DNA from: Paramoeba atlantica
Taxonomy: Eukaryota > Protista > Discosea
Direction of reading: 5' to 3'
Length of the DNA stretch: 64,000 nt
Assembly (NCBI GenBank): GCA_977017575.1
Contig: CDRNVI010000008.1
Span: forward strand, 1 to 64,000
This document shows positions 13,571 through 20,266 of this stretch, piece by piece. Position numbers and translations under genes: made by a program. The notes under the pieces are model-generated. The model saw nothing but the letters and a program-made list of their open reading frames with translations. It had not been told where the DNA came from and searched no databases. Position 1 is the stretch's first letter. The number at the start of each line of letters is the position of its first letter.

Positions 13571-13811
13571 ATCACCAGCCAATACTGCCTGTGAGAATCT
13601 TGAGAAATTGCTCATCTACAGAGTTGAGTCTATACATTGTCATAGTTCCTCTTATGCAACACAAATCCAAAGACCATAGCACGTAATTCATGTCCTTTTT
13701 TGTTATGATCATGCTTTTTTATGGCTAGGTATGATTTTGCGATTCATCTCCATTATCGATCCTCACATTTTTTCTTATCTTGACCCCTACCTCCTTATTC
13801 CTCACCTCCCC

Positions 13812-16800
13812 ATGCGTCGACTCTACCCCAAACTCCCCTCCCCCCTCTCCACTACCCCTTTCCTCCTACGACACTTCACCGATGCCACGCAATCCCGCAA
13901 ACCTCACCCCCACGAATCCTTCGTCAACGGACTCCAAACCGAGTTCCTTGACAACCTTCTCACCACGTGGCAAACCACCCCAGCGGCCGTCGACCCCTCC
14001 TGGCACCCCATCCTGGAAAAACTCACCCATGCCCGTCCAGAGGATCCCTTAGTGAAATCCTTTGACCGCTCCCAGGCTCTTGCTCAAGGCTCTGCGCTCG
14101 AGGACACGCTCTCTTCCACTTCTGAAACATCTTGTGCTGCTGCTGCGGCTGCGGCTTTAGCCTCTCGCAAGGACATCATGGATCACTTCAAGGTGACCTG
14201 GATGATACGTGCCTATGAGGTCCGTGGACACCGCATCGCGGATGTGGACCCGCTGGCCCCCGTGGGAGATCGGGACACGACCCGGGCCCATGAGCTCCAG
14301 CTGCAACACTTTGGGTTTCAGGAGAGTGATTTGAGCCGTGAGTTCCATATGGGGGTAATCCCCGCTCTTGGGGGGATACACGCCGCGAATCAAAAAATGA
14401 CCTTGCGTGCGATTGTGGAGAAGCTCCACAAAACGTACTGTCAGAAGGTAGGCTATGAGTTTACCCATATTGTGGATGCGCGTCGGGCACGGTGGATGCG
14501 GGAGCGTATTGCGGCACCGCAGCCCCCGACGGTGGCGGAGAGAAAGGCGTGTTTGCATGATCTTGTGCGTACGTTCTCGTTTGAGCGCACGTTGCTTTCG
14601 GAGTTTGCGGACGCGACACGGTATGGGATTTCCGGTGTAGAGGTACTGATTCCGGTAATGAAACTGCTGGTGCGCCACGCCGCCGCGAGTGGGGTGCGGG
14701 AGATTGTGATTGGCGGCACCCACCGGGGGCGGTTCAACATGCTCGCCCACGTACTGAGCACCGACATGGGGTTCGTACTGCAGCAGCTGTACGATCACAA
14801 AAACGGCACCCCCCACCGCACCGAGTCCCGCGACATCCTCGCCAACCAAGGCTACGGCCTCGAACGTGCCACCCTTAACGGCGACCGCATCCGTCTCACC
14901 CTCCTCCCCAACGCCACCCACTCCGAGAGCGTAAGCCCCCTCGTCGCGGGCTACGTCCGTGCCCGACAACACTACGACCAAGCCGACCCCCACCGCACCC
15001 GAACCCTCGCCGTCCTCCTCCACGGCGACGGCGGTTTCGCCTCCCAGGGGGTCGCCTACGAGACCACCGGCCTCTCCGACCTCCAGTTCCACAACATCGG
15101 CGGCACCCTCCACCTGGTCCTCAACAACCGTCTCGCCCACACCGCCTCCCCCTCCCAGTACCGCGGCCCCACCGCTGCTGCCGCCTGCACCAACCTCGCC
15201 CTCCCCGTCCAGGCCCCCGTGTTCCACGTCAACGCGGACGACCCCGACGGGGCCCTGCGGGTCGTGCGGCTCGCGCTGGACTACCGCGGGGCGTTCCACC
15301 AGGACGCGATCGTGGACCTGGTGTGCTACCGGGCCCACGGCCACAGCGAGACGGACGACCCGACGGTGGCCCACCCGCAGCTGTACCGCACCGTCGCGCG
15401 GCACCCCGACGTGCTGTCGCAGTACGCGGGGCGGCTGGTGGGGGAGGGGGTGGTGGGGGCGGGGGAGGTCGGGGGGGTGGAGGCGGGGGTGAACCGGGAG
15501 CTGCGGGGGGCGCTGGCGAATGTGAAGAGGGGGAGCGTGAGTGGGTGGGAGAGGGGGGCGAGGGCAGGGGGTACGGGGGCGGGGACGACGGCGACAACGG
15601 TGGTGGGGGGGAGTTGTGTGGCGTTGCCGGGGGTGACGGGGGTGGGGAGGGAGGGGTTGCGGGATTTGGGGAAAAGGTTGGCAAAGCTGCCGGAGGGGTT
15701 TGATCCGCACCCGACGTTGCGGCGGATTTTGGAGGAGAGGGCCAAGCATTATGATTCTGGGGAGGGGTTGGATTGGGGAGCGGCGGAGGCGTTGGCGTTT
15801 GCGTCGTTGCTGCAGCAAGGGGTTCATGTACGGGTCAGTGGGCAGGATGTCGAGCGTGGGACGTTTTCTCACCGGCACGCGCTGTTGGTGGATGTGAACA
15901 CTGCGAAGGTGACCATTCCGCTGGCGAATTTCCTGCCTGGGGTCCAGGCCCCGTTTCGGATTGTCAACTCCTCGTTGTCGGAGTATGCCGTCTGTGGATA
16001 TGAGTTAGGGTATAGCACGGCGAATCCGAATGCGGTCGTGATCTGGGAAGCGCAATTTGGGGATTTTGCAAACGGTGCCCAGGTGATTTTCGACCAGTAT
16101 CTGAGCTCCATGGAGTGGAAATGGGGTACCGCCGTGACTGGGTTGGTGGTGAATCTCCCCCATGGGTACGACGGCATGGGCCCGGAGCACTCCAGCGGGC
16201 GGATTGAGCGGTTTCTACAAGGTAGTGATGATGACGAGGAGCTCCCGATGGCGTTGCTGCGCAAGAACCGCGTCTTGCTGCGTCAAGTCGCTGAGAATCG
16301 TGACCTGAACTTGCTCTACCCCGTGTTGGAGGACATGATTCGCACGTACAACTGGCAGGTGTGCTTCCCCTCGACGCCTGCGAATTACTTCCACGTGCTA
16401 CGAAGACAGGTGCACCGTGCTTTCCGTAAGCCGTTGATTAATTTTTACAGCAAAGCGTTTCTCCGAGCCCCAAACATTTCCAGCTACGCCGAGATGGGGA
16501 CCGGTACGCTCTTCCAGCCGATCATCGATGACCCAAGCGTGACGCACTACGACAAAGTTAAGAAGGTGATCTTGTGCACGGGGCAAATCTATTTCCATCT
16601 AAGAAAGCACCGCGACAGCAGCAAAAAAGCCTGTAAATTGGCTTTGGTACGATTGGAACAACTCTCCCCCTTTCCGTGGCTACACGTAGATGCCGTGCTC
16701 TCTCGCTACCCGAACAAAGTGGCTATCTCGTGGGCCCAGGAGGAGCCCATGAACATGGGAGCGTGGAACTACGTAGAGCCCCGGCTACATAATCTCCTCT

Positions 16801-16931
16801 CTTTCCATCACAGGAAAACTACTGTTCGCTACGTGGGACGACCGCCCGCGGCAGCCAGCGCAGTGGGAGCGAAATCCATGCACGATGCCGAGATCGCGCG
16901 GTACTTGGAAGAGGCTATGAGCGGTATTTAG
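13812..16931 (+). CDS. OGDH: 2-oxoglutarate dehydrogenase E1, paralog 1 (canonical beta/Pyr half, diverged alpha/PP half)
   Basis: Arg-rich mitochondrial-type N-terminus, FVNGLQTEFLDNL, HGDGGFASQG, GQDVERGTFSHRH, SSLSEY, WEAQFGDFANGAQ, LPHGYDGMGPEHSSGRIERFLQ, WAQEEPMNMGAW. The ORF is open from 13731; ATG 13812 was chosen as the likely start. Confidence 0.95.
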   Translation: MRRLYPKLPSPLSTTPFLLRHFTDATQSRKPHPHESFVNGLQTEFLDNLLTTWQTTPAAVDPSWHPILEKLTHARPEDPLVKSFDRSQALAQGSALEDTLSSTSETSCAAAAAAALASRKDIMDHFKVTWMIRAYEVRGHRIADVDPLAPVGDRDTTRAHELQLQHFGFQESDLSREFHMGVIPALGGIHAANQKMTLRAIVEKLHKTYCQKVGYEFTHIVDARRARWMRERIAAPQPPTVAERKACLHDLVRTFSFERTLLSEFADATRYGISGVEVLIPVMKLLVRHAAASGVREIVIGGTHRGRFNMLAHVLSTDMGFVLQQLYDHKNGTPHRTESRDILANQGYGLERATLNGDRIRLTLLPNATHSESVSPLVAGYVRARQHYDQADPHRTRTLAVLLHGDGGFASQGVAYETTGLSDLQFHNIGGTLHLVLNNRLAHTASPSQYRGPTAAAACTNLALPVQAPVFHVNADDPDGALRVVRLALDYRGAFHQDAIVDLVCYRAHGHSETDDPTVAHPQLYRTVARHPDVLSQYAGRLVGEGVVGAGEVGGVEAGVNRELRGALANVKRGSVSGWERGARAGGTGAGTTATTVVGGSCVALPGVTGVGREGLRDLGKRLAKLPEGFDPHPTLRRILEERAKHYDSGEGLDWGAAEALAFASLLQQGVHVRVSGQDVERGTFSHRHALLVDVNTAKVTIPLANFLPGVQAPFRIVNSSLSEYAVCGYELGYSTANPNAVVIWEAQFGDFANGAQVIFDQYLSSMEWKWGTAVTGLVVNLPHGYDGMGPEHSSGRIERFLQGSDDDEELPMALLRKNRVLLRQVAENRDLNLLYPVLEDMIRTYNWQVCFPSTPANYFHVLRRQVHRAFRKPLINFYSKAFLRAPNISSYAEMGTGTLFQPIIDDPSVTHYDKVKKVILCTGQIYFHLRKHRDSSKKACKLALVRLEQLSPFPWLHVDAVLSRYPNKVAISWAQEEPMNMGAWNYVEPRLHNLLSFHHRKTTVRYVGRPPAAASAVGAKSMHDAEIARYLEEAMSGI

Positions 16932-17112
16932 TGTTCGCTGTGTCTTCAGCAGGGAAGTGCTAATTTTAGATTGAGAATTCTGAACCATTTTTTCATGTAA
17001 TTCAATGCATTTTTTTCGTTTCTTACGTTCCCTTAATAATTAAATTTTGTGCTGATAATCTGTTTCTTCCAACTGTCCTATTGAAGCGCTTTGTGATACA
17101 ATGTATACACCA

Positions 17113-17161
17113 ATGACACGTTACATCACTAGGCACTATGACACGTTACATCACTAGGCAC
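17113..17161. repeat. 25-bp tandem duplication in the OGDH intergenic region
   Basis: ATGACACGTTACATCACTAGGCAC(T) x2. Confidence 0.9.
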
Positions 17162-17287
17162 AAATAAAATGCGCTTTTCATCAGCCCTTCTGACGACTCT
17201 CCATTATTTTTACCACAAAACAGTATTTTTCTTCTTTCTCTTCCACACCTCCTCTTCCATTCTTCCTCCCCCCTCTCCCTTCCTTTC

Positions 17288-20266
17288 ATGATGCGACGCG
17301 TCACTCCCCGTCTCCACACCGCCACTCCCCGACGCTACCCCCTCCACCCGTGCGACAACTTCCTTACCCCAGAAAACGCCTCCTATCTCGACACCCTCCC
17401 CCCAGACACCGCCCCTCCCCCACCCCACCCTACCCCCAGCCTCGATCCCCCCACCTGGGCCTCTCTCCTTCACAAAGCCGATGACCTCCCACGAGAGCAG
17501 CCGTTGCTACGCTCCACCTTTCGACCGCTCTCTTCTTCTTCTTCTTCTCATCCCCACAAATCTTCTTCCCCTTCTTCCCTTCACAACGTTTCTGTGAATT
17601 ACTCTATGAGCGAGGCGGCACGGCTAGCCTGGATGTGTCGCGCCTGGCAAGTCCACGGTCACCTCACCGCCACCCTTGACCCGTTGAATTTACACCAAGG
17701 CATGCTGCGGATGCCCGACTCCTTTGGGGTGCGCGTGGAGGAACTCGAGCCCGCGTACTTTGGGTTCACCGAGGCCGACCTCGAGCGCTCGTTTTATCTC
17801 GGCATGTCCTCCACGAAAGGGGGACTGCTCGGGGAGGACACCACCATGACCCTACGGGAGCTCCATGCGAAGTTAAAAAGTATTTATGGACAGAAAATTG
17901 GGTACCAGTTTATGCATCTCGCGGAGCCGGAGTGTGCAAAATGGTTCCGGGATCGGATCGAGACCCCGGAGCACTATCCGGAGTATTTGGGGTTCTCCAC
18001 GGAGGAGAAGCTGGATGTGCTGCATCACCTGGCGCGCGGGGAACTCTTCGAGCAGTTTCTCCACACGAAATTTGTCGGGAGTAAACGGTTTGGGCTGGAT
18101 GGTGGGGAGTCGCTGATTCCGGGGATGATGGAAATGATCCAACGCGCGGCCTCTCATGGGGTGGAGCACATTGTGTTGGGGATGCCCCACCGTGGGAGGC
18201 TATCGGTACTCACCAATGTGTGTGGGAAACCTATGGAGGCGCTTTTTAAGGAATTTAAGGGACTCACGCTGGATGATATGCAGGGTGAGGGTTCCGGAGA
18301 TGTGAAGTATCACTTGGGGATGACTAACCGACGGGTGTTGAAGAATGGCAGCGCCATCCAGCTCAGTCTGCTTGCGAATCCAAGTCACCTTGAGGCGGTG
18401 AACCCGTTAGTGGAGGGTAAGGCACGGGCGAAGCAACACTGTCTTGGGGACACCTCCCGGGACCGGGTGATGGCCGTCCAGCTGCACGGCGATGCGGCGT
18501 TTGCGGGCCAGGGCGTGTGCTACGAGACCATGGGTCTCGGCGAGTTGGAGTCATTTAGCACTGGGGGAACCATTCATATTGTGGTGAACAACCAGATCGG
18601 GTTCACCACGGACCCGAAAAAGTCACGCTCCTCCCCGTATTGCACCGATCTCGGGCGTGTGTTTGGGTGTCCGGTGCTGCACGTGAACGGGGATAGCCCA
18701 GAGGACGTTGCCCGGGTGTTTCGCCTGGCCGCAGATTTCCGTAAAGAGTTCAAAAAATCCATCATCGTCGACCTCGTGTGCTACCGCCGTTTCGGCCACA
18801 ACGAGACCGACGAACCCATGTTCACCCAACCCCTCATGTACCGCGCCATCAAAAACCACCCCACCATTCTCACCCAATACACCCAAAAACTCATCTCCGA
18901 GAACTGCATCACCCCGGAAGAAACCCAAACCCTCCACCACACCATCACCCAAGCCCTCCGCGCCTCCCTCACCCACCTCGACGCCTACACCCTTACCAAA
19001 TCCGAGTGGTACGACTCCTACTGGAAAAACTTCCGCAAGGCCTCCCATGTCTTTGCCAAGCTCTACCCCACCCAAGTCTCCGGGGAGGTCCTCCGCGAGC
19101 TCTCCACTCTGGTCATCCAAGTCCCCCCGCGTATTGCGCTTCACCCCAAGTTAGCCTCCCTGTTCAAGGCCCGGCAGCACACGCTGGACACCGGCAAGGG
19201 GATCGGCTGGGCCACGGCAGAGGCCCTGGCCTTTGGGAGTCTCCTGCAGGAGGGGATCCACCTGCGGCTCAGTGGGCAGGACGTCGCGAAGGGGAGCTAC
19301 CACCAGCGGCACGCGGTGGTGCGGGACGCGCTGACGGGGGTGGAGTACAGCCCGCTGAAGAACATGTCGAGTGGACGGTTCGTGCTGTGCGACAGCCCCG
19401 GGGGGAACTACGGGGTGCTGGGGTACGAGCTGGGGTACTCCATGGAGAGCCCACAGGCGCTGGTGATCTGGGAGGCCCCGGAGGGGGAGTTGGTGAACAG
19501 TGCACAGATTGTGGTGGATCAGTTTATTGCGTCCGGGGAGGCGAAGTGGGGTCGGCAGTGTGGGTTGGTGGTGGCGTTGCCGGTGGGGTGTGAGGGGGAG
19601 GGACCGGATTTGTCGGGGGCTCGGGTGGAGAGGTTTTTGCAGGCGGTGGATGAGGAGGTGGCGGAGGATGCGGAGGGGTATGGGCCGAATTCTCATGCGA
19701 GGGTGAATATGGAGGTGGTGAGCCCGACGACGCCGGCGAATTACTTTCATTTGTTACGGCGCCAAATTCATCGGAATTTTCGTAAACCGTTGGTGTTGTT
19801 CCTGCCGAAGACCACCGTAGGTAGTGCAAAGGAGGAGTTGGTGGATTCTGAGTTCGCCCCAGTGATCGCTGACGAGGCACGCTGTTCGCCGGATGCCGTG
19901 ACAAAGGTGGTGTTGTGCTGTGGTCCGTTTTATTACCGTCTGTGTGAGGCCTTGTCAGACCTCTCGAAAAAGGACGTCGTACTGGTTCGTGTCGAACAGC
20001 TTGCACCGTTTCCCGACCGCCTTGTGAAGAAACAGCTTGAGCGATTTCCTAAGGCAAAGGTGGTGTGGGCTCAGGAGGAGCCGCGGAATATGGGCGCCTG
20101 GAGTTATGTCCGTCCGCGAATTAACGCCGCACTACGCTGTGGGAAAAGGAAACATTCCGAGTTACAGTATCGAGGACCCCGGGCGTGCTCCGTGGTGTGT
20201 ACCGGAGACAAGCACATATTCGCACAGCAGCAAAAACAGCTTGTTAAATCAGTGTTCGACGAGTAG
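17288..20266 (+). CDS. OGDH: 2-oxoglutarate dehydrogenase E1, paralog 2 (canonical alpha/PP half, degenerate beta/Pyr half)
   Basis: KRFGLDGGESLIP, GMPHRGRL, GDVKYHLG, NPSHLEAV, HGDAAFAGQG, NNQIGFTT, RRFGHNE are all canonical. C-terminal motifs are altered (GQDVAKGSYHQRH, SPGGNY, WEAPEGELVNSAQ, LPVGCEGEGPDLSGARVERFLQ). Confidence 0.95.
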   Translation: MMRRVTPRLHTATPRRYPLHPCDNFLTPENASYLDTLPPDTAPPPPHPTPSLDPPTWASLLHKADDLPREQPLLRSTFRPLSSSSSSHPHKSSSPSSLHNVSVNYSMSEAARLAWMCRAWQVHGHLTATLDPLNLHQGMLRMPDSFGVRVEELEPAYFGFTEADLERSFYLGMSSTKGGLLGEDTTMTLRELHAKLKSIYGQKIGYQFMHLAEPECAKWFRDRIETPEHYPEYLGFSTEEKLDVLHHLARGELFEQFLHTKFVGSKRFGLDGGESLIPGMMEMIQRAASHGVEHIVLGMPHRGRLSVLTNVCGKPMEALFKEFKGLTLDDMQGEGSGDVKYHLGMTNRRVLKNGSAIQLSLLANPSHLEAVNPLVEGKARAKQHCLGDTSRDRVMAVQLHGDAAFAGQGVCYETMGLGELESFSTGGTIHIVVNNQIGFTTDPKKSRSSPYCTDLGRVFGCPVLHVNGDSPEDVARVFRLAADFRKEFKKSIIVDLVCYRRFGHNETDEPMFTQPLMYRAIKNHPTILTQYTQKLISENCITPEETQTLHHTITQALRASLTHLDAYTLTKSEWYDSYWKNFRKASHVFAKLYPTQVSGEVLRELSTLVIQVPPRIALHPKLASLFKARQHTLDTGKGIGWATAEALAFGSLLQEGIHLRLSGQDVAKGSYHQRHAVVRDALTGVEYSPLKNMSSGRFVLCDSPGGNYGVLGYELGYSMESPQALVIWEAPEGELVNSAQIVVDQFIASGEAKWGRQCGLVVALPVGCEGEGPDLSGARVERFLQAVDEEVAEDAEGYGPNSHARVNMEVVSPTTPANYFHLLRRQIHRNFRKPLVLFLPKTTVGSAKEELVDSEFAPVIADEARCSPDAVTKVVLCCGPFYYRLCEALSDLSKKDVVLVRVEQLAPFPDRLVKKQLERFPKAKVVWAQEEPRNMGAWSYVRPRINAALRCGKRKHSELQYRGPRACSVVCTGDKHIFAQQQKQLVKSVFDE

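What the first reader, a model, noticed from the sequence alone, without database searches (positions are those of the whole stretch)
13812..20266. Tandem 2-oxoglutarate dehydrogenase E1 paralogs with reciprocal loss of active-site halves: predicted obligate heterodimer with one functional site
Seen: paralog 1 keeps canonical Pyr/beta motifs (GQDVERGTFSHRH; SLSEY with the ThDP-activating Glu at 15981-15983; WEAQFGDF; GPEHSS). Its PP/alpha motifs are eroded (DVKYH>DILAN, PSHL>ATHS, NNQIGFTT>NNRLAHTA, GHNE>GHSE), although GDG..NN survives. Paralog 2 shows the mirror image: the alpha motifs are perfect but Glu>Asn (SPGGNY, AAC at 19406-19408), QFGDF>PEGEL, PEHSS>PDLSG. Established: in E1o/transketolase-type dimers ThDP sits between the PP domain of one subunit and the Pyr domain of the other. 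Inference: neither homodimer would be fully active, while the heterodimer rebuilds one complete site and a dead or regulatory second site. This would be a clean case of complementary subfunctionalisation. I recall that trypanosomatids also carry two E1o genes, so the split may be lineage-wide.
Basis: partly seen in the sequence, partly recalled or inferred. Interest (0 to 1): 0.8.

Follow-up and report, generated by a model that had tools for sequence, protein, structure and literature searches.

The report
Two half-dead enzyme paralogs, one site
Two neighbouring copies of the Krebs-cycle enzyme 2-oxoglutarate dehydrogenase E1 have each lost the opposite half of the shared catalytic pocket, and the same mirror-image loss is kept in the related symbiont Perkinsela, so the enzyme most likely works only as a mixed pair with one working site instead of two.

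Summary
Two tandem + strand genes (13812-16931 and 17288-20266) encode full-length E1o proteins. PAR1 has eroded PP-domain catalytic motifs and a canonical Pyr domain; PAR2 is the mirror image.

- **Unbiased test:** I used 180 columns that are at least 90% conserved in 381 other E1o proteins. PAR1 keeps 53/77 PP and 72/74 Pyr positions. PAR2 keeps 73/77 PP and 56/74 Pyr.
- **Conservation elsewhere:** Three Perkinsela-like genomes carry the same tandem pair in the same gene order, with the same reciprocal erosion but partly different replacement residues.
- **Timing:** Free-living prokinetoplastids (PhM-4, PhF-6), Trypanosoma and diplonemids have canonical orthologues. The duplication is therefore old and the reciprocal decay is confined to the window-plus-Perkinsela clade.
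- **Selection:** Both genes are under purifying selection. All 15 differences between assemblies are synonymous, and omega is about 0.1-0.16 between Perkinsela lineages.
- **No spare copy in Perkinsela:** It has only these two E1o genes, plus E2o and E3.

The best reading is an obligate heterodimer with one composite ThDP site. This is inferred, not shown biochemically. It is a new variant of the pseudoenzyme-paralog complementation known from trypanosome deoxyhypusine synthase, and I found no report of it for ThDP enzymes. The scan already noted this pair on another piece of the same genome (s1-377429).

The parts
13812..16931 (+). PAR1: full-length E1o paralog (1039 aa from MRRLYPKL; the ORF opens at 13731). 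PP half eroded, Pyr half canonical.
   Evidence: ORF; Pfam E1_dh + Transket_pyr + OxoGdeHyase_C; human OGDH 8i0k E = 3e-191; AF2 pLDDT 84.7 and TM 0.90 to 8i0k.
13914..14027 (+). PAR1 N-terminal segment resembling the E2o/E3-docking motif (PF16078), aa 35-72.
   Evidence: 23.6 bits against a gathering score of 27, so weak. The Perkinsela orthologue scores 28.9 bits. No match in PAR2.
14580..15530 (+). PAR1 PP (diphosphate-binding) domain with eroded catalytic and substrate residues. DILAN 14832-14846 loses E. coli K296, Y297 and H298. ATHS 14913-14924. NNRLAHTA 15123-15146 loses Q391 and F394. GHSE 15339-15350 is N461S. HRGR 14721-14732 and GDGG 15024-15035 are kept.
   Evidence: Keeps 53 of 77 conserved PP columns against 72 of 74 Pyr columns.
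15765..16463 (+). PAR1 Pyr (pyrimidine-binding) domain, fully canonical. Glu724 codon 15981-15983, WEAQFGDF 16044-16067, GPEHSS 16179-16196 (His = E. coli H729).
   Evidence: 0 of 28 key positions differ from the consensus.
16932..17287 (+). 356-nt spacer between the two genes, inside a same-strand gene array.
   Evidence: The corresponding spacer is 87-97 nt in Perkinsela-like genomes.
17288..20266 (+). PAR2: full-length E1o paralog (992 aa). PP half canonical, Pyr half eroded.
   Evidence: Pfam; 8i0k E = 7e-211; AF2 pLDDT 85.2 and TM 0.92-0.94 to solved E1o.
18047..18964 (+). PAR2 PP domain, canonical: HRGR 18188-18199, GDVKYH 18296-18313, PSHL 18380-18391, GDAA 18488-18499, NNQIGFTT 18587-18610, GHNE 18794-18805.
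   Evidence: 0 of 23 key positions differ. 72-75% identity to Perkinsela and PhF-6 orthologues in this domain.
19199..19816 (+). PAR2 Pyr domain with eroded cofactor-activating and substrate residues. AKGSYHQ 19286-19306. SPGGNY 19394-19411, with Asn707 (19406-19408) in place of the Glu. PEGEL 19478-19492 in place of QFGDF. LPVGC 19577-19591. PDLSG 19604-19618, which loses E. coli H729.
   Evidence: Keeps 56 of 74 conserved Pyr columns against 73 of 77 PP columns.

Best explanation
The two genes encode the two different subunits of a heterodimeric 2-oxoglutarate dehydrogenase E1.

In E1o dimers each ThDP site lies between the PP domain of one chain and the Pyr domain of the other. This is established from solved structures.

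In the mixed dimer, the PAR2 PP domain is intact. It carries HRGR, DVKYH, PSHLE, GDA...NN and GHNE, and so three of the four catalytic histidines and the Mg-diphosphate anchor. It faces the intact PAR1 Pyr domain, which carries the activating Glu, QFGDF and the PEHSS histidine. Together they give one complete site.

The other site, PAR1-PP with PAR2-Pyr, lacks residues on both sides and is catalytically dead. Either homodimer would have two incomplete sites.

PAR1 also carries the recognisable N-terminal docking segment for the E2o core. The pair sits in one same-strand gene array and is probably made in similar amounts (inference).

The state arose by reciprocal decay of an old kinetoplastid duplicate pair in the common ancestor of this organism and Perkinsela, and has been held by selection since.

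Shown: the sequence pattern, its conservation, the orthology, the selection, and the absence of a third E1o in Perkinsela. Inferred: heterodimer formation, activity, and a single working site.
For: - **Reciprocal pattern.** The reciprocal erosion is exact.
- **Site geometry.** The E1o site sits at the protomer interface. The predicted catalytic histidines are His543/583/747/1017 of OdhA, which I map (by motif and my own knowledge of MsKGD numbering, not from a tool alignment) to E. coli H260/H298/H460/H729 (paper PMC10415282). ThDP lies between the subunits, and F227, Y297, F394 and D688 line the substrate pocket (PMC8146983). PAR1-type proteins lose Y297, H298, F394 and N461. PAR2-type proteins lose E661, F686, D688 and H729.
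- **Conserved pair.** The same tandem pair, same order and same neighbours (UCH ... InsP5 2-kinase, S7e, Leo1, DEAD) occur in three Perkinsela-like genomes, with the same reciprocal loss.
- **Congruent trees.** A careful ML tree gives mirror-image congruent subtrees for the two paralogs with 100/100 support. The erosion maps to a single clade in each.
- **Shared derived states.** F282L and N461S in PAR1-type; F623Y, D688E, S731G and H918F in PAR2-type. These date the decay to before the split.
- **Selection.** 15 of 15 inter-assembly differences are synonymous. Omega is 0.10 and 0.16 between Perkinsela lineages. The only functional PP domain (PAR2-type) is 72-75% identical across the clade, against 53% in a canonical comparison.
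- **No third copy in Perkinsela.** K00164 is assigned only to KNH03824/5 and KNH09035/6, which are the same locus assembled twice. E2o and E3 are present, and the cycle from 2-oxoglutarate to oxaloacetate is retained (Tanifuji 2017, PMC5601477 supplements).
- **Fold.** Both proteins are predicted to fold as complete E1o chains.
Against: - No direct evidence of a physical heterodimer, of activity, or of expression in this organism. Only two small contigs of a run guessed to be RNA lie on PAR2.
- A heterodimer model could not be built with the tools.
- I could not search the window organism's whole genome for a third, canonical E1o. Only the scan notes were available.
- From my own knowledge, one ThDP enzyme (glyoxylate carboligase) works without the canonical Glu, so loss of Glu alone is not proof of a dead site.
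- E1 enzymes are often described as using communication between their two sites. A one-site enzyme may be slow, or the description may not apply here.
Confidence: 0.75

Rival explanations
1. Both proteins are pseudoenzymes kept for non-catalytic roles, such as scaffolding or moonlighting of the kind reported for trypanosome 2-oxoglutarate dehydrogenase subunits. On this reading 2-oxoglutarate dehydrogenase activity has been lost in this clade.
For: Each protein alone lacks essential residues. Perkinsela has a reduced, incomplete TCA cycle.
Against: Catalytic residues with no structural role would not stay at 23/23 and 27-28/28 key positions in exactly complementary halves across four long-diverged lineages. 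E2o, E3 and the downstream enzymes are retained in the reduced Perkinsela genome.
Confidence: 0.07
2. One or both homodimers remain active through non-canonical chemistry, with catalytic roles moved to other residues. On this reading the paralogs are two separate enzymes, possibly with different 2-oxo acid substrates, as for OGDH and DHTKD1.
For: Substrate-pocket residues are among those changed in PAR1 (F227, Y297, F394, N461). In DHTKD1 several of the same positions differ to accept 2-oxoadipate. From my own knowledge, a ThDP enzyme without the Glu exists.
Against: The replacement residues are not conserved between the window organism and Perkinsela: DILAN versus DRAYQ/EVAYQ, SPGGNY versus SPACSY/SPTCAY, PEGEL versus HDSES/HNGDC. 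That fits loss rather than a new pocket. PAR2-type proteins lose the Glu, the stacking Phe and the His together. The complementarity itself would be a coincidence repeated in both genes.
Confidence: 0.08
3. A heterodimer forms, but the second site has become a regulatory or structural cofactor site rather than a merely dead one. This is a variant of the main reading.
For: GDGG...NN and HRG are conserved in all four PAR1-type lineages. The eroded halves have omega of 0.095 and 0.127 and are predicted to be well folded.
Against: Other diphosphate and pyrimidine contacts are lost and vary between lineages: PSHLE becomes GPQQE in Perkinsela, and the Glu and Phe of the partner Pyr domain are gone. 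Low omega can reflect fold and interface constraints alone.
Confidence: 0.2
4. The pattern is an assembly, annotation or alignment artefact, or one copy is a decaying pseudogene.
For: Public gene calls for this organism cut both genes into pieces.
Against: Both ORFs are intact at 1039 and 992 codons. Two other assemblies span the locus with only synonymous changes. Orthologues are intact in three other genomes. Omega is about 0.1.
Confidence: 0.01

Closest known systems
Canonical homodimeric E1o (E. coli SucA 2JGD, human OGDH 7WGR/8I0K, M. smegmatis KGD, C. glutamicum OdhA)
   Same: Same domain architecture, length and predicted fold (TM 0.90-0.94, 33-39% identity). Same placement of ThDP at the interface between two chains.
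   Different: All solved E1o are homo-oligomers with two identical complete sites per dimer. Here each chain has one intact and one eroded half, so only a mixed dimer can have a complete site, and only one.
Trypanosomatid deoxyhypusine synthase DHSc/DHSp (Afanador et al. 2018, cited in PMC7581365; Nguyen et al. 2013, PMC3663545)
   Same: Two paralogs of one enzyme in a kinetoplastid form a heterodimer that shares one functional and one dead catalytic site. Both are needed.
   Different: Different fold, cofactor (NAD) and reaction. In DHS the losses are mostly on one paralog (DHSp lacks the catalytic Lys). Here the two losses are clean mirror images by domain. DHS has been shown experimentally; this case has not.
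Trypanosome prozymes (AdoMetDC/prozyme, PRMT1 ENZ/PRO)
   Same: A catalytically dead paralog is required for the activity of its partner (PMC5201418, bioRxiv 776112).
   Different: In those cases one partner keeps a complete active site and is activated allosterically. Here neither partner has a complete site.
Heterotetrameric alpha2beta2 E1 enzymes (pyruvate and branched-chain 2-oxo acid dehydrogenase E1); from my own knowledge, not tested here
   Same: The PP function and the Pyr function are supplied by different polypeptides.
   Different: There each chain carries only one domain type and both sites of the tetramer work. Here both chains are full-length E1o and one site is lost.
Vertebrate E1o paralogs OGDH, OGDHL and DHTKD1
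   Same: Several E1o-type paralogs in one genome share one E2o core.
   Different: Each vertebrate paralog is a complete homodimeric enzyme. Mixing happens at the level of the E2 core, not within an E1 dimer.

Membership tests
2-oxoglutarate dehydrogenase E1 (E1o, K00164) | Domain architecture E1_dh (PP) + Transket_pyr (Pyr) + OxoGdeHyase_C in one chain of about 900-1050 aa | tested here: met
   both proteins, E 1e-32 to 1e-49 for each domain.
2-oxoglutarate dehydrogenase E1 (E1o, K00164) | End-to-end similarity in sequence and fold to solved E1o | tested here: met
   E 1e-191 and 1e-211 to human OGDH; TM 0.90-0.94.
2-oxoglutarate dehydrogenase E1 (E1o, K00164) | Mg-ThDP anchor GD(G/A)...NN in the PP domain | tested here: met
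   GDGG...NN in PAR1 and GDAA...NN in PAR2.
2-oxoglutarate dehydrogenase E1 (E1o, K00164) | Cofactor-activating Glu in the Pyr domain (E. coli E661) | tested here: not met
   Met in PAR1 (Glu724). Not met in PAR2 (Asn707). So PAR2 alone is not a competent E1o.
2-oxoglutarate dehydrogenase E1 (E1o, K00164) | Four catalytic histidines (E. coli H260, H298, H460, H729) | tested here: not met
   PAR1 lacks H298 (Asn). PAR2 lacks H729 (Leu). All four are present only when PAR2-PP is combined with PAR1-Pyr.
2-oxoglutarate dehydrogenase E1 (E1o, K00164) | N-terminal segment that docks on E2o (PF16078) | tested here: inconclusive
   PAR1 scores 23.6 bits, below the 27-bit cut-off. The Perkinsela orthologue scores 28.9. 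PAR2, the Perkinsela downstream protein and PhF-6 give no match at E <= 10.
2-oxoglutarate dehydrogenase E1 (E1o, K00164) | Partner E2o and E3 encoded in the same genome | not testable with these tools
   Not searchable for the window organism. Present in Perkinsela according to PMC5601477 supplements.
Paralog pair with shared active-site complementation (DHSc/DHSp type) | Active site built from residues of two chains | tested here: met
   By homology to solved E1o, whose site is at the protomer interface. Not seen directly for these proteins.
Paralog pair with shared active-site complementation (DHSc/DHSp type) | Each paralog lacks essential residues that the other retains | tested here: met
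Paralog pair with shared active-site complementation (DHSc/DHSp type) | No complete third copy that could supply the activity | tested here: inconclusive
   Met for Perkinsela CCAP 1560/4: K00164 is assigned only to the pair, and no further Perkinsela hit appears. For the window organism only the scan notes could be asked.
Paralog pair with shared active-site complementation (DHSc/DHSp type) | Physical heteromer, with activity only when both are present | not testable with these tools
   Needs co-expression, pull-down and assay.
Split alpha/beta E1 (alpha2beta2) | PP and Pyr domains on separate short chains | tested here: not met
   Both proteins carry all three domains.

The most novel reading that the evidence does not exclude
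Heterodimerisation of the two E1o paralogs is ancestral to kinetoplastids, so the trypanosome enzyme would also be a mixed dimer. The reciprocal decay seen here would be the end point of a neutral ratchet. The decayed site would be kept as a non-catalytic cofactor or regulatory pocket, making this a natural one-catalytic-site E1o that still couples to a second ThDP-type pocket.

Hints in favour:
- The PAR2 lineage has already lost the recognisable E2-docking N-terminus in the otherwise canonical PhF-6 protein.
- Trypanosoma PAR2-type proteins show mild Pyr-side drift only (6-7 of 28 positions).
- GDGG...NN is conserved in all PAR1-type proteins.
- The eroded halves have omega of about 0.1.
Probability: 0.2. 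Interest if true: 0.85.

Novelty: new variant of a known kind. Interest (0 to 1): 0.72.

Why it matters
ThDP-dependent E1 enzymes are textbook symmetric dimers. Whether their two sites must communicate (half-of-the-sites or alternating-sites behaviour) is an old argument, and it has been tested mainly with engineered mutants. A natural E1o that has run on one composite site for a very long time would be a ready-made test case: how fast is it, how many ThDP does it bind, and what does the dead pocket do?

For evolution, it is an unusually clean example of duplicate genes locked together by complementary loss within a single shared active site. Three things help here. The intermediate (canonical) states are still alive in free-living relatives. 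There are four independent descendants to compare. And the genes are still in tandem.

It also extends the kinetoplastid habit of pairing enzymes with degenerate paralogs to central carbon metabolism.

Practically, genome annotations call both Perkinsela genes plain 'E1 component', and metabolic reconstructions should treat them as one enzyme.

Tried and rejected
- **Word-based homologue search with PAR1**. It missed the Perkinsela orthologue because only the 8000 candidates sharing the most words were scored. The exhaustive search and the genomic neighbourhood recovered it.
- **Literature searches.** I searched Perkinsela plus oxoglutarate dehydrogenase, and prozyme/pseudoenzyme plus thiamine diphosphate. 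No report of this pair or of a natural half-site ThDP heterodimer turned up. This is absence within the searched library only.
- **T. brucei gene-ID search**. It gave nothing on E1 pairing, and my remembered IDs proved unreliable: one paper uses Tb927.11.9980 for E2. I make no claim about T. brucei gene IDs.
- **Two canonical ENA proteins, P0396 and P0400.** I suspected these might be a third copy. They come from other samples and group with diplonemids.
- **RNA evidence.** No run on record as RNA holds the locus. One guessed-RNA run gives two short contigs on PAR2 only, so expression in this organism is not shown.
- **dS between Perkinsela CCAP and the ENA lineages** is saturated, so no omega could be computed. 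Only the closest pair gave values.
- **Heterodimer modelling** was not possible: the structure tool folds single natural chains only. I did not attempt a fused construct.
- **Tandem arrangement outside the clade.** It is not seen around the T. melophagium orthologue. The free-living relative's contig was uninformative.
Full report
**What is there**

They are separated by 356 nt. Both carry the three Pfam domains of 2-oxoglutarate dehydrogenase E1: E1_dh, Transket_pyr and OxoGdeHyase_C. Both align end to end with human OGDH, E. coli SucA and mycobacterial KGD, with E values of 1e-191 and 1e-211.

AlphaFold2 models of both chains are confident (pLDDT 85, pTM 0.84-0.85). They superpose on solved E1o structures with target-normalised TM of 0.90-0.94. 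Every ORF of 200 aa or more that is not nested inside a longer + strand ORF lies on the + strand, as in a kinetoplastid polycistron.

**Check of the observation**

I aligned the pair with E. coli SucA (taken from the K-12 record) and with many E1o proteins.

- **PAR1** keeps HRGR, GDGG and NN. It has DILAN for DVKYH, losing E. coli K296, Y297 and H298. It has ATHSE for PSHLE, NNRLAHTA for NNQIGFTT (losing Q391 and F394), and GHSE for GHNE (N461S). Its Pyr domain matches the consensus at all 28 key positions, including Glu724 (15981-15983), QFGDF and PEHSS.
- **PAR2** is the reverse. All 23 PP key positions are canonical. It has AKGSYHQ for ERGTFSH, and SPGGNY for SSLSEY, with Asn707 (19406-19408) at the Glu position. 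It has PEGEL for QFGDF, LPVGC for LPHGY, and PDLSG for PEHSS (H729 lost).
- The Asn-Glu equivalence holds in the HMMER pairwise alignment with human OGDH and in every multiple alignment.

**Is it more than chance or motif picking?**

Among 389 E1o-family proteins collected from three searches, PP-side mismatches at the key positions are 0-4, except in PAR1 (11) and the Perkinsela upstream proteins. Eighteen or more Pyr-side mismatches occur only in PAR2 (18) and three Perkinsela downstream proteins (19-23). The next highest, 11 and 12, belong to a truncated sequence and one other.

To avoid hand-picked positions, I took all 180 columns that are at least 90% conserved in the 381 other sequences.

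| Protein | PP columns kept | Pyr columns kept | Fisher p |
|---|---|---|---|
| PAR1 | 53/77 | 72/74 | 2e-6 |
| PAR2 | 73/77 | 56/74 | 1e-3 |

Controls keep about 91-100% on both sides. The controls were free-living prokinetoplastids, Trypanosoma, diplonemids, a euglenid, a fish and a plant.

**Related loci**

The closest relatives of PAR2 are proteins of Perkinsela sp. CCAP 1560/4 and two further Perkinsela-like assemblies, at 55-56% identity. Their genomic neighbourhoods show a second E1o gene directly upstream on the same strand, 87-97 nt away. The flanking genes are those of the window: ubiquitin hydrolase upstream, then InsP5 2-kinase, ribosomal protein S7e, Leo1 and a DEAD helicase downstream.

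- The upstream proteins show the PAR1-type erosion: DRAYQ or EVAYQ, GPQQE or GTQQE, NNEIANTS, GHSN, and also HRGI. Their Pyr domain is perfect.
- The downstream proteins show the PAR2-type erosion: Glu replaced by Ser or Ala, QFGDF by HDSES, HNGDC or HNADC, and PEHSS by EQSG or EHAG. Their PP domain is perfect.
- The replacement residues mostly differ between lineages, which fits loss of constraint at those positions.
- Several derived states are shared: F282L, N461S and GDAA-to-GDGG in the PAR1 type; F623Y, D688E, S731G, N265S and H918F in the PAR2 type. So the decay began before the lineages split.

**Phylogeny**

A careful ML tree (LG+C20+F+G4, 37 sequences, with a quick version) gives a monophyletic euglenozoan E1o group. 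Within it are two kinetoplastid paralog clades whose internal branching is the same. Each reads Trypanosoma-type, then a free-living prokinetoplastid (PhM-4 and a metagenome protein in one clade, PhF-6 in the other), then the window protein, then the three Perkinsela-like proteins. All of these nodes have 100/100 or near support.

The duplication therefore predates the kinetoplastid radiation. One clade may share it with diplonemids, at 89/86 support only. Trypanosoma has one orthologue of each. The erosion is confined to the window-plus-Perkinsela clade: PhM-4, PhF-6, both Trypanosoma paralogs and all diplonemid copies are canonical. In T. melophagium the gene is not next to its paralog.

The window organism is thus a relative of Perkinsela (Prokinetoplastina) that branches outside the three sampled Perkinsela lineages. 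Its intergenic spacers are much longer. I cannot name it.

**Selection**

- Contigs from other public runs of the same organism span the locus. They differ at 15 positions, all synonymous (5 in PAR1, 10 in PAR2), plus one in-frame TCT indel in the Ser-rich N-terminus of PAR2.
- Between the two closest Perkinsela-like lineages, NG86 omega is 0.10 for the upstream gene and 0.16 for the downstream gene. In the eroded halves themselves it is 0.095 and 0.127. dS is high, at 0.6-1.4, so these values are rough.
- Domain identities tell the same story. PAR1 against the Perkinsela upstream protein is 41-43% in PP and 76% in Pyr. PAR2 against the Perkinsela downstream protein is 74-75% in PP and 61-62% in Pyr. 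A canonical comparison gives 53% and 73%.

Neither gene is a pseudogene. The eroded halves are still constrained, presumably as folded parts of a dimer.

**Why a heterodimer**

Solved E1o structures place ThDP-Mg at the interface of two chains (PMC8146983; PMC10415282). The latter paper lists four predicted catalytic histidines, which I map (by motif and my own knowledge, not from a tool alignment) to E. coli H260, H298 and H460 in the PP domain and H729 in the Pyr domain. That the PP domain of one chain pairs with the Pyr domain of the other is established knowledge for transketolase-type dimers.

Combining the PAR2 PP domain with the PAR1 Pyr domain gives every conserved residue. The other pocket lacks residues from both sides.

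Perkinsela, whose genome is small and well inventoried, has K00164 assigned only to this pair, which appears twice because the locus was assembled on two contigs. [quoted passage not shown] 2017, PMC5601477 supplements). That paper lists both proteins simply as E1 subunits.

So if the complex works at all, these two proteins must supply E1. The perfect conservation of complementary catalytic halves says that it does work. This chain of reasoning is inference; nothing here shows the proteins together or active.

**Further detail**

The N-terminal segment that in human E1o binds E2o and E3 is detectable in PAR1-type proteins and in both Trypanosoma paralogs. It is not detectable in PAR2, the Perkinsela downstream proteins or the otherwise canonical PhF-6 protein. 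This hints that the PAR2 lineage may already have depended on a partner for docking before the catalytic decay. That is speculation.

PAR2-type proteins also lose a few conserved positions of the C-terminal domain.

**Comparison with what is known**

As proteins, both are E1o homologues, but neither passes the catalytic-residue tests alone.

As a mechanism, the closest case is trypanosomatid deoxyhypusine synthase. There two paralogs form a heterodimer with one functional and one dead shared site. Other trypanosome prozymes differ because one partner keeps a full site.

I found no report of a natural ThDP enzyme of this kind, nor of this Perkinsela pair. That is absence within the searchable library only.

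That piece is 6458 nt against 6455 here, which matches the allele with the TCT insertion. It is probably the same locus on another contig, not independent support.

**Verdict**

The lineage-wide suggestion is right for the duplication and wrong for the reciprocal decay.

Noticed in passing
window 460-31795 compared with L005 and L010: The window is collinear with Perkinsela-like contigs over about 30 kb: ubiquitin hydrolase, the two E1o genes, InsP5 2-kinase, S7e, Leo1, DEAD helicase. Its AT-rich spacers are far longer. The spacer between the E1o genes is 356 nt, against 87-97 nt there. It looks like a much less compacted relative of the Perkinsela genome.
   Followed up: partly
window 17288-17647; P0122, P0123: The N-terminal E2o/E3-docking motif (PF16078) is undetectable in the PAR2 lineage of prokinetoplastids, including the catalytically canonical PhF-6 protein. 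It is present in the PAR1 lineage and in both Trypanosoma paralogs.
   Followed up: partly
window 17530: An in-frame TCT (Ser) insertion polymorphism between assemblies lies in the Ser-rich, low-confidence N-terminal region of PAR2. All 15 single-base differences across both genes are synonymous.
   Followed up: yes
window 15530-15760 (PAR1 aa about 575-650) and 16220-16320: PAR1 has a Gly/Ala/Thr-rich insertion between the PP and Pyr domains (pLDDT below 50 at aa 584-605). It also has an extra helical insertion of about 25 residues after GPEHSS that is longer than in other E1o proteins.
   Followed up: no
L009 (ENA ERZ24900291 contig, same organism): Public gene calls for this organism cut both E1o genes into fragments (492 aa and at least 334 aa) and call antisense ORFs. 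The full-length pair is therefore not represented in the protein databases searched.
   Followed up: partly
window 14157-15878 minus strand: A 573-codon antisense ORF lies inside the GC-rich PP domain of PAR1. It is probably a by-product of composition (64.6% GC in this stretch), not a gene.
   Followed up: no
I did not examine it.
   Followed up: no
PAR2-type proteins, C-terminal domain (E. coli positions 904, 911, 918): Conserved C-terminal-domain residues are replaced in PAR2 and in the Perkinsela downstream proteins; H918F is shared. The erosion may extend to whatever this domain contributes to the dead site.
   Followed up: no
P0174, P0251 (Trypanosoma PAR2-type): Trypanosoma PAR2-type proteins differ from the consensus at 6-7 of 28 Pyr key positions (F686Y, Q694A/T, P727A) but at none of the 23 PP positions. 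This is a mild asymmetry in the same direction as the full erosion.
   Followed up: partly
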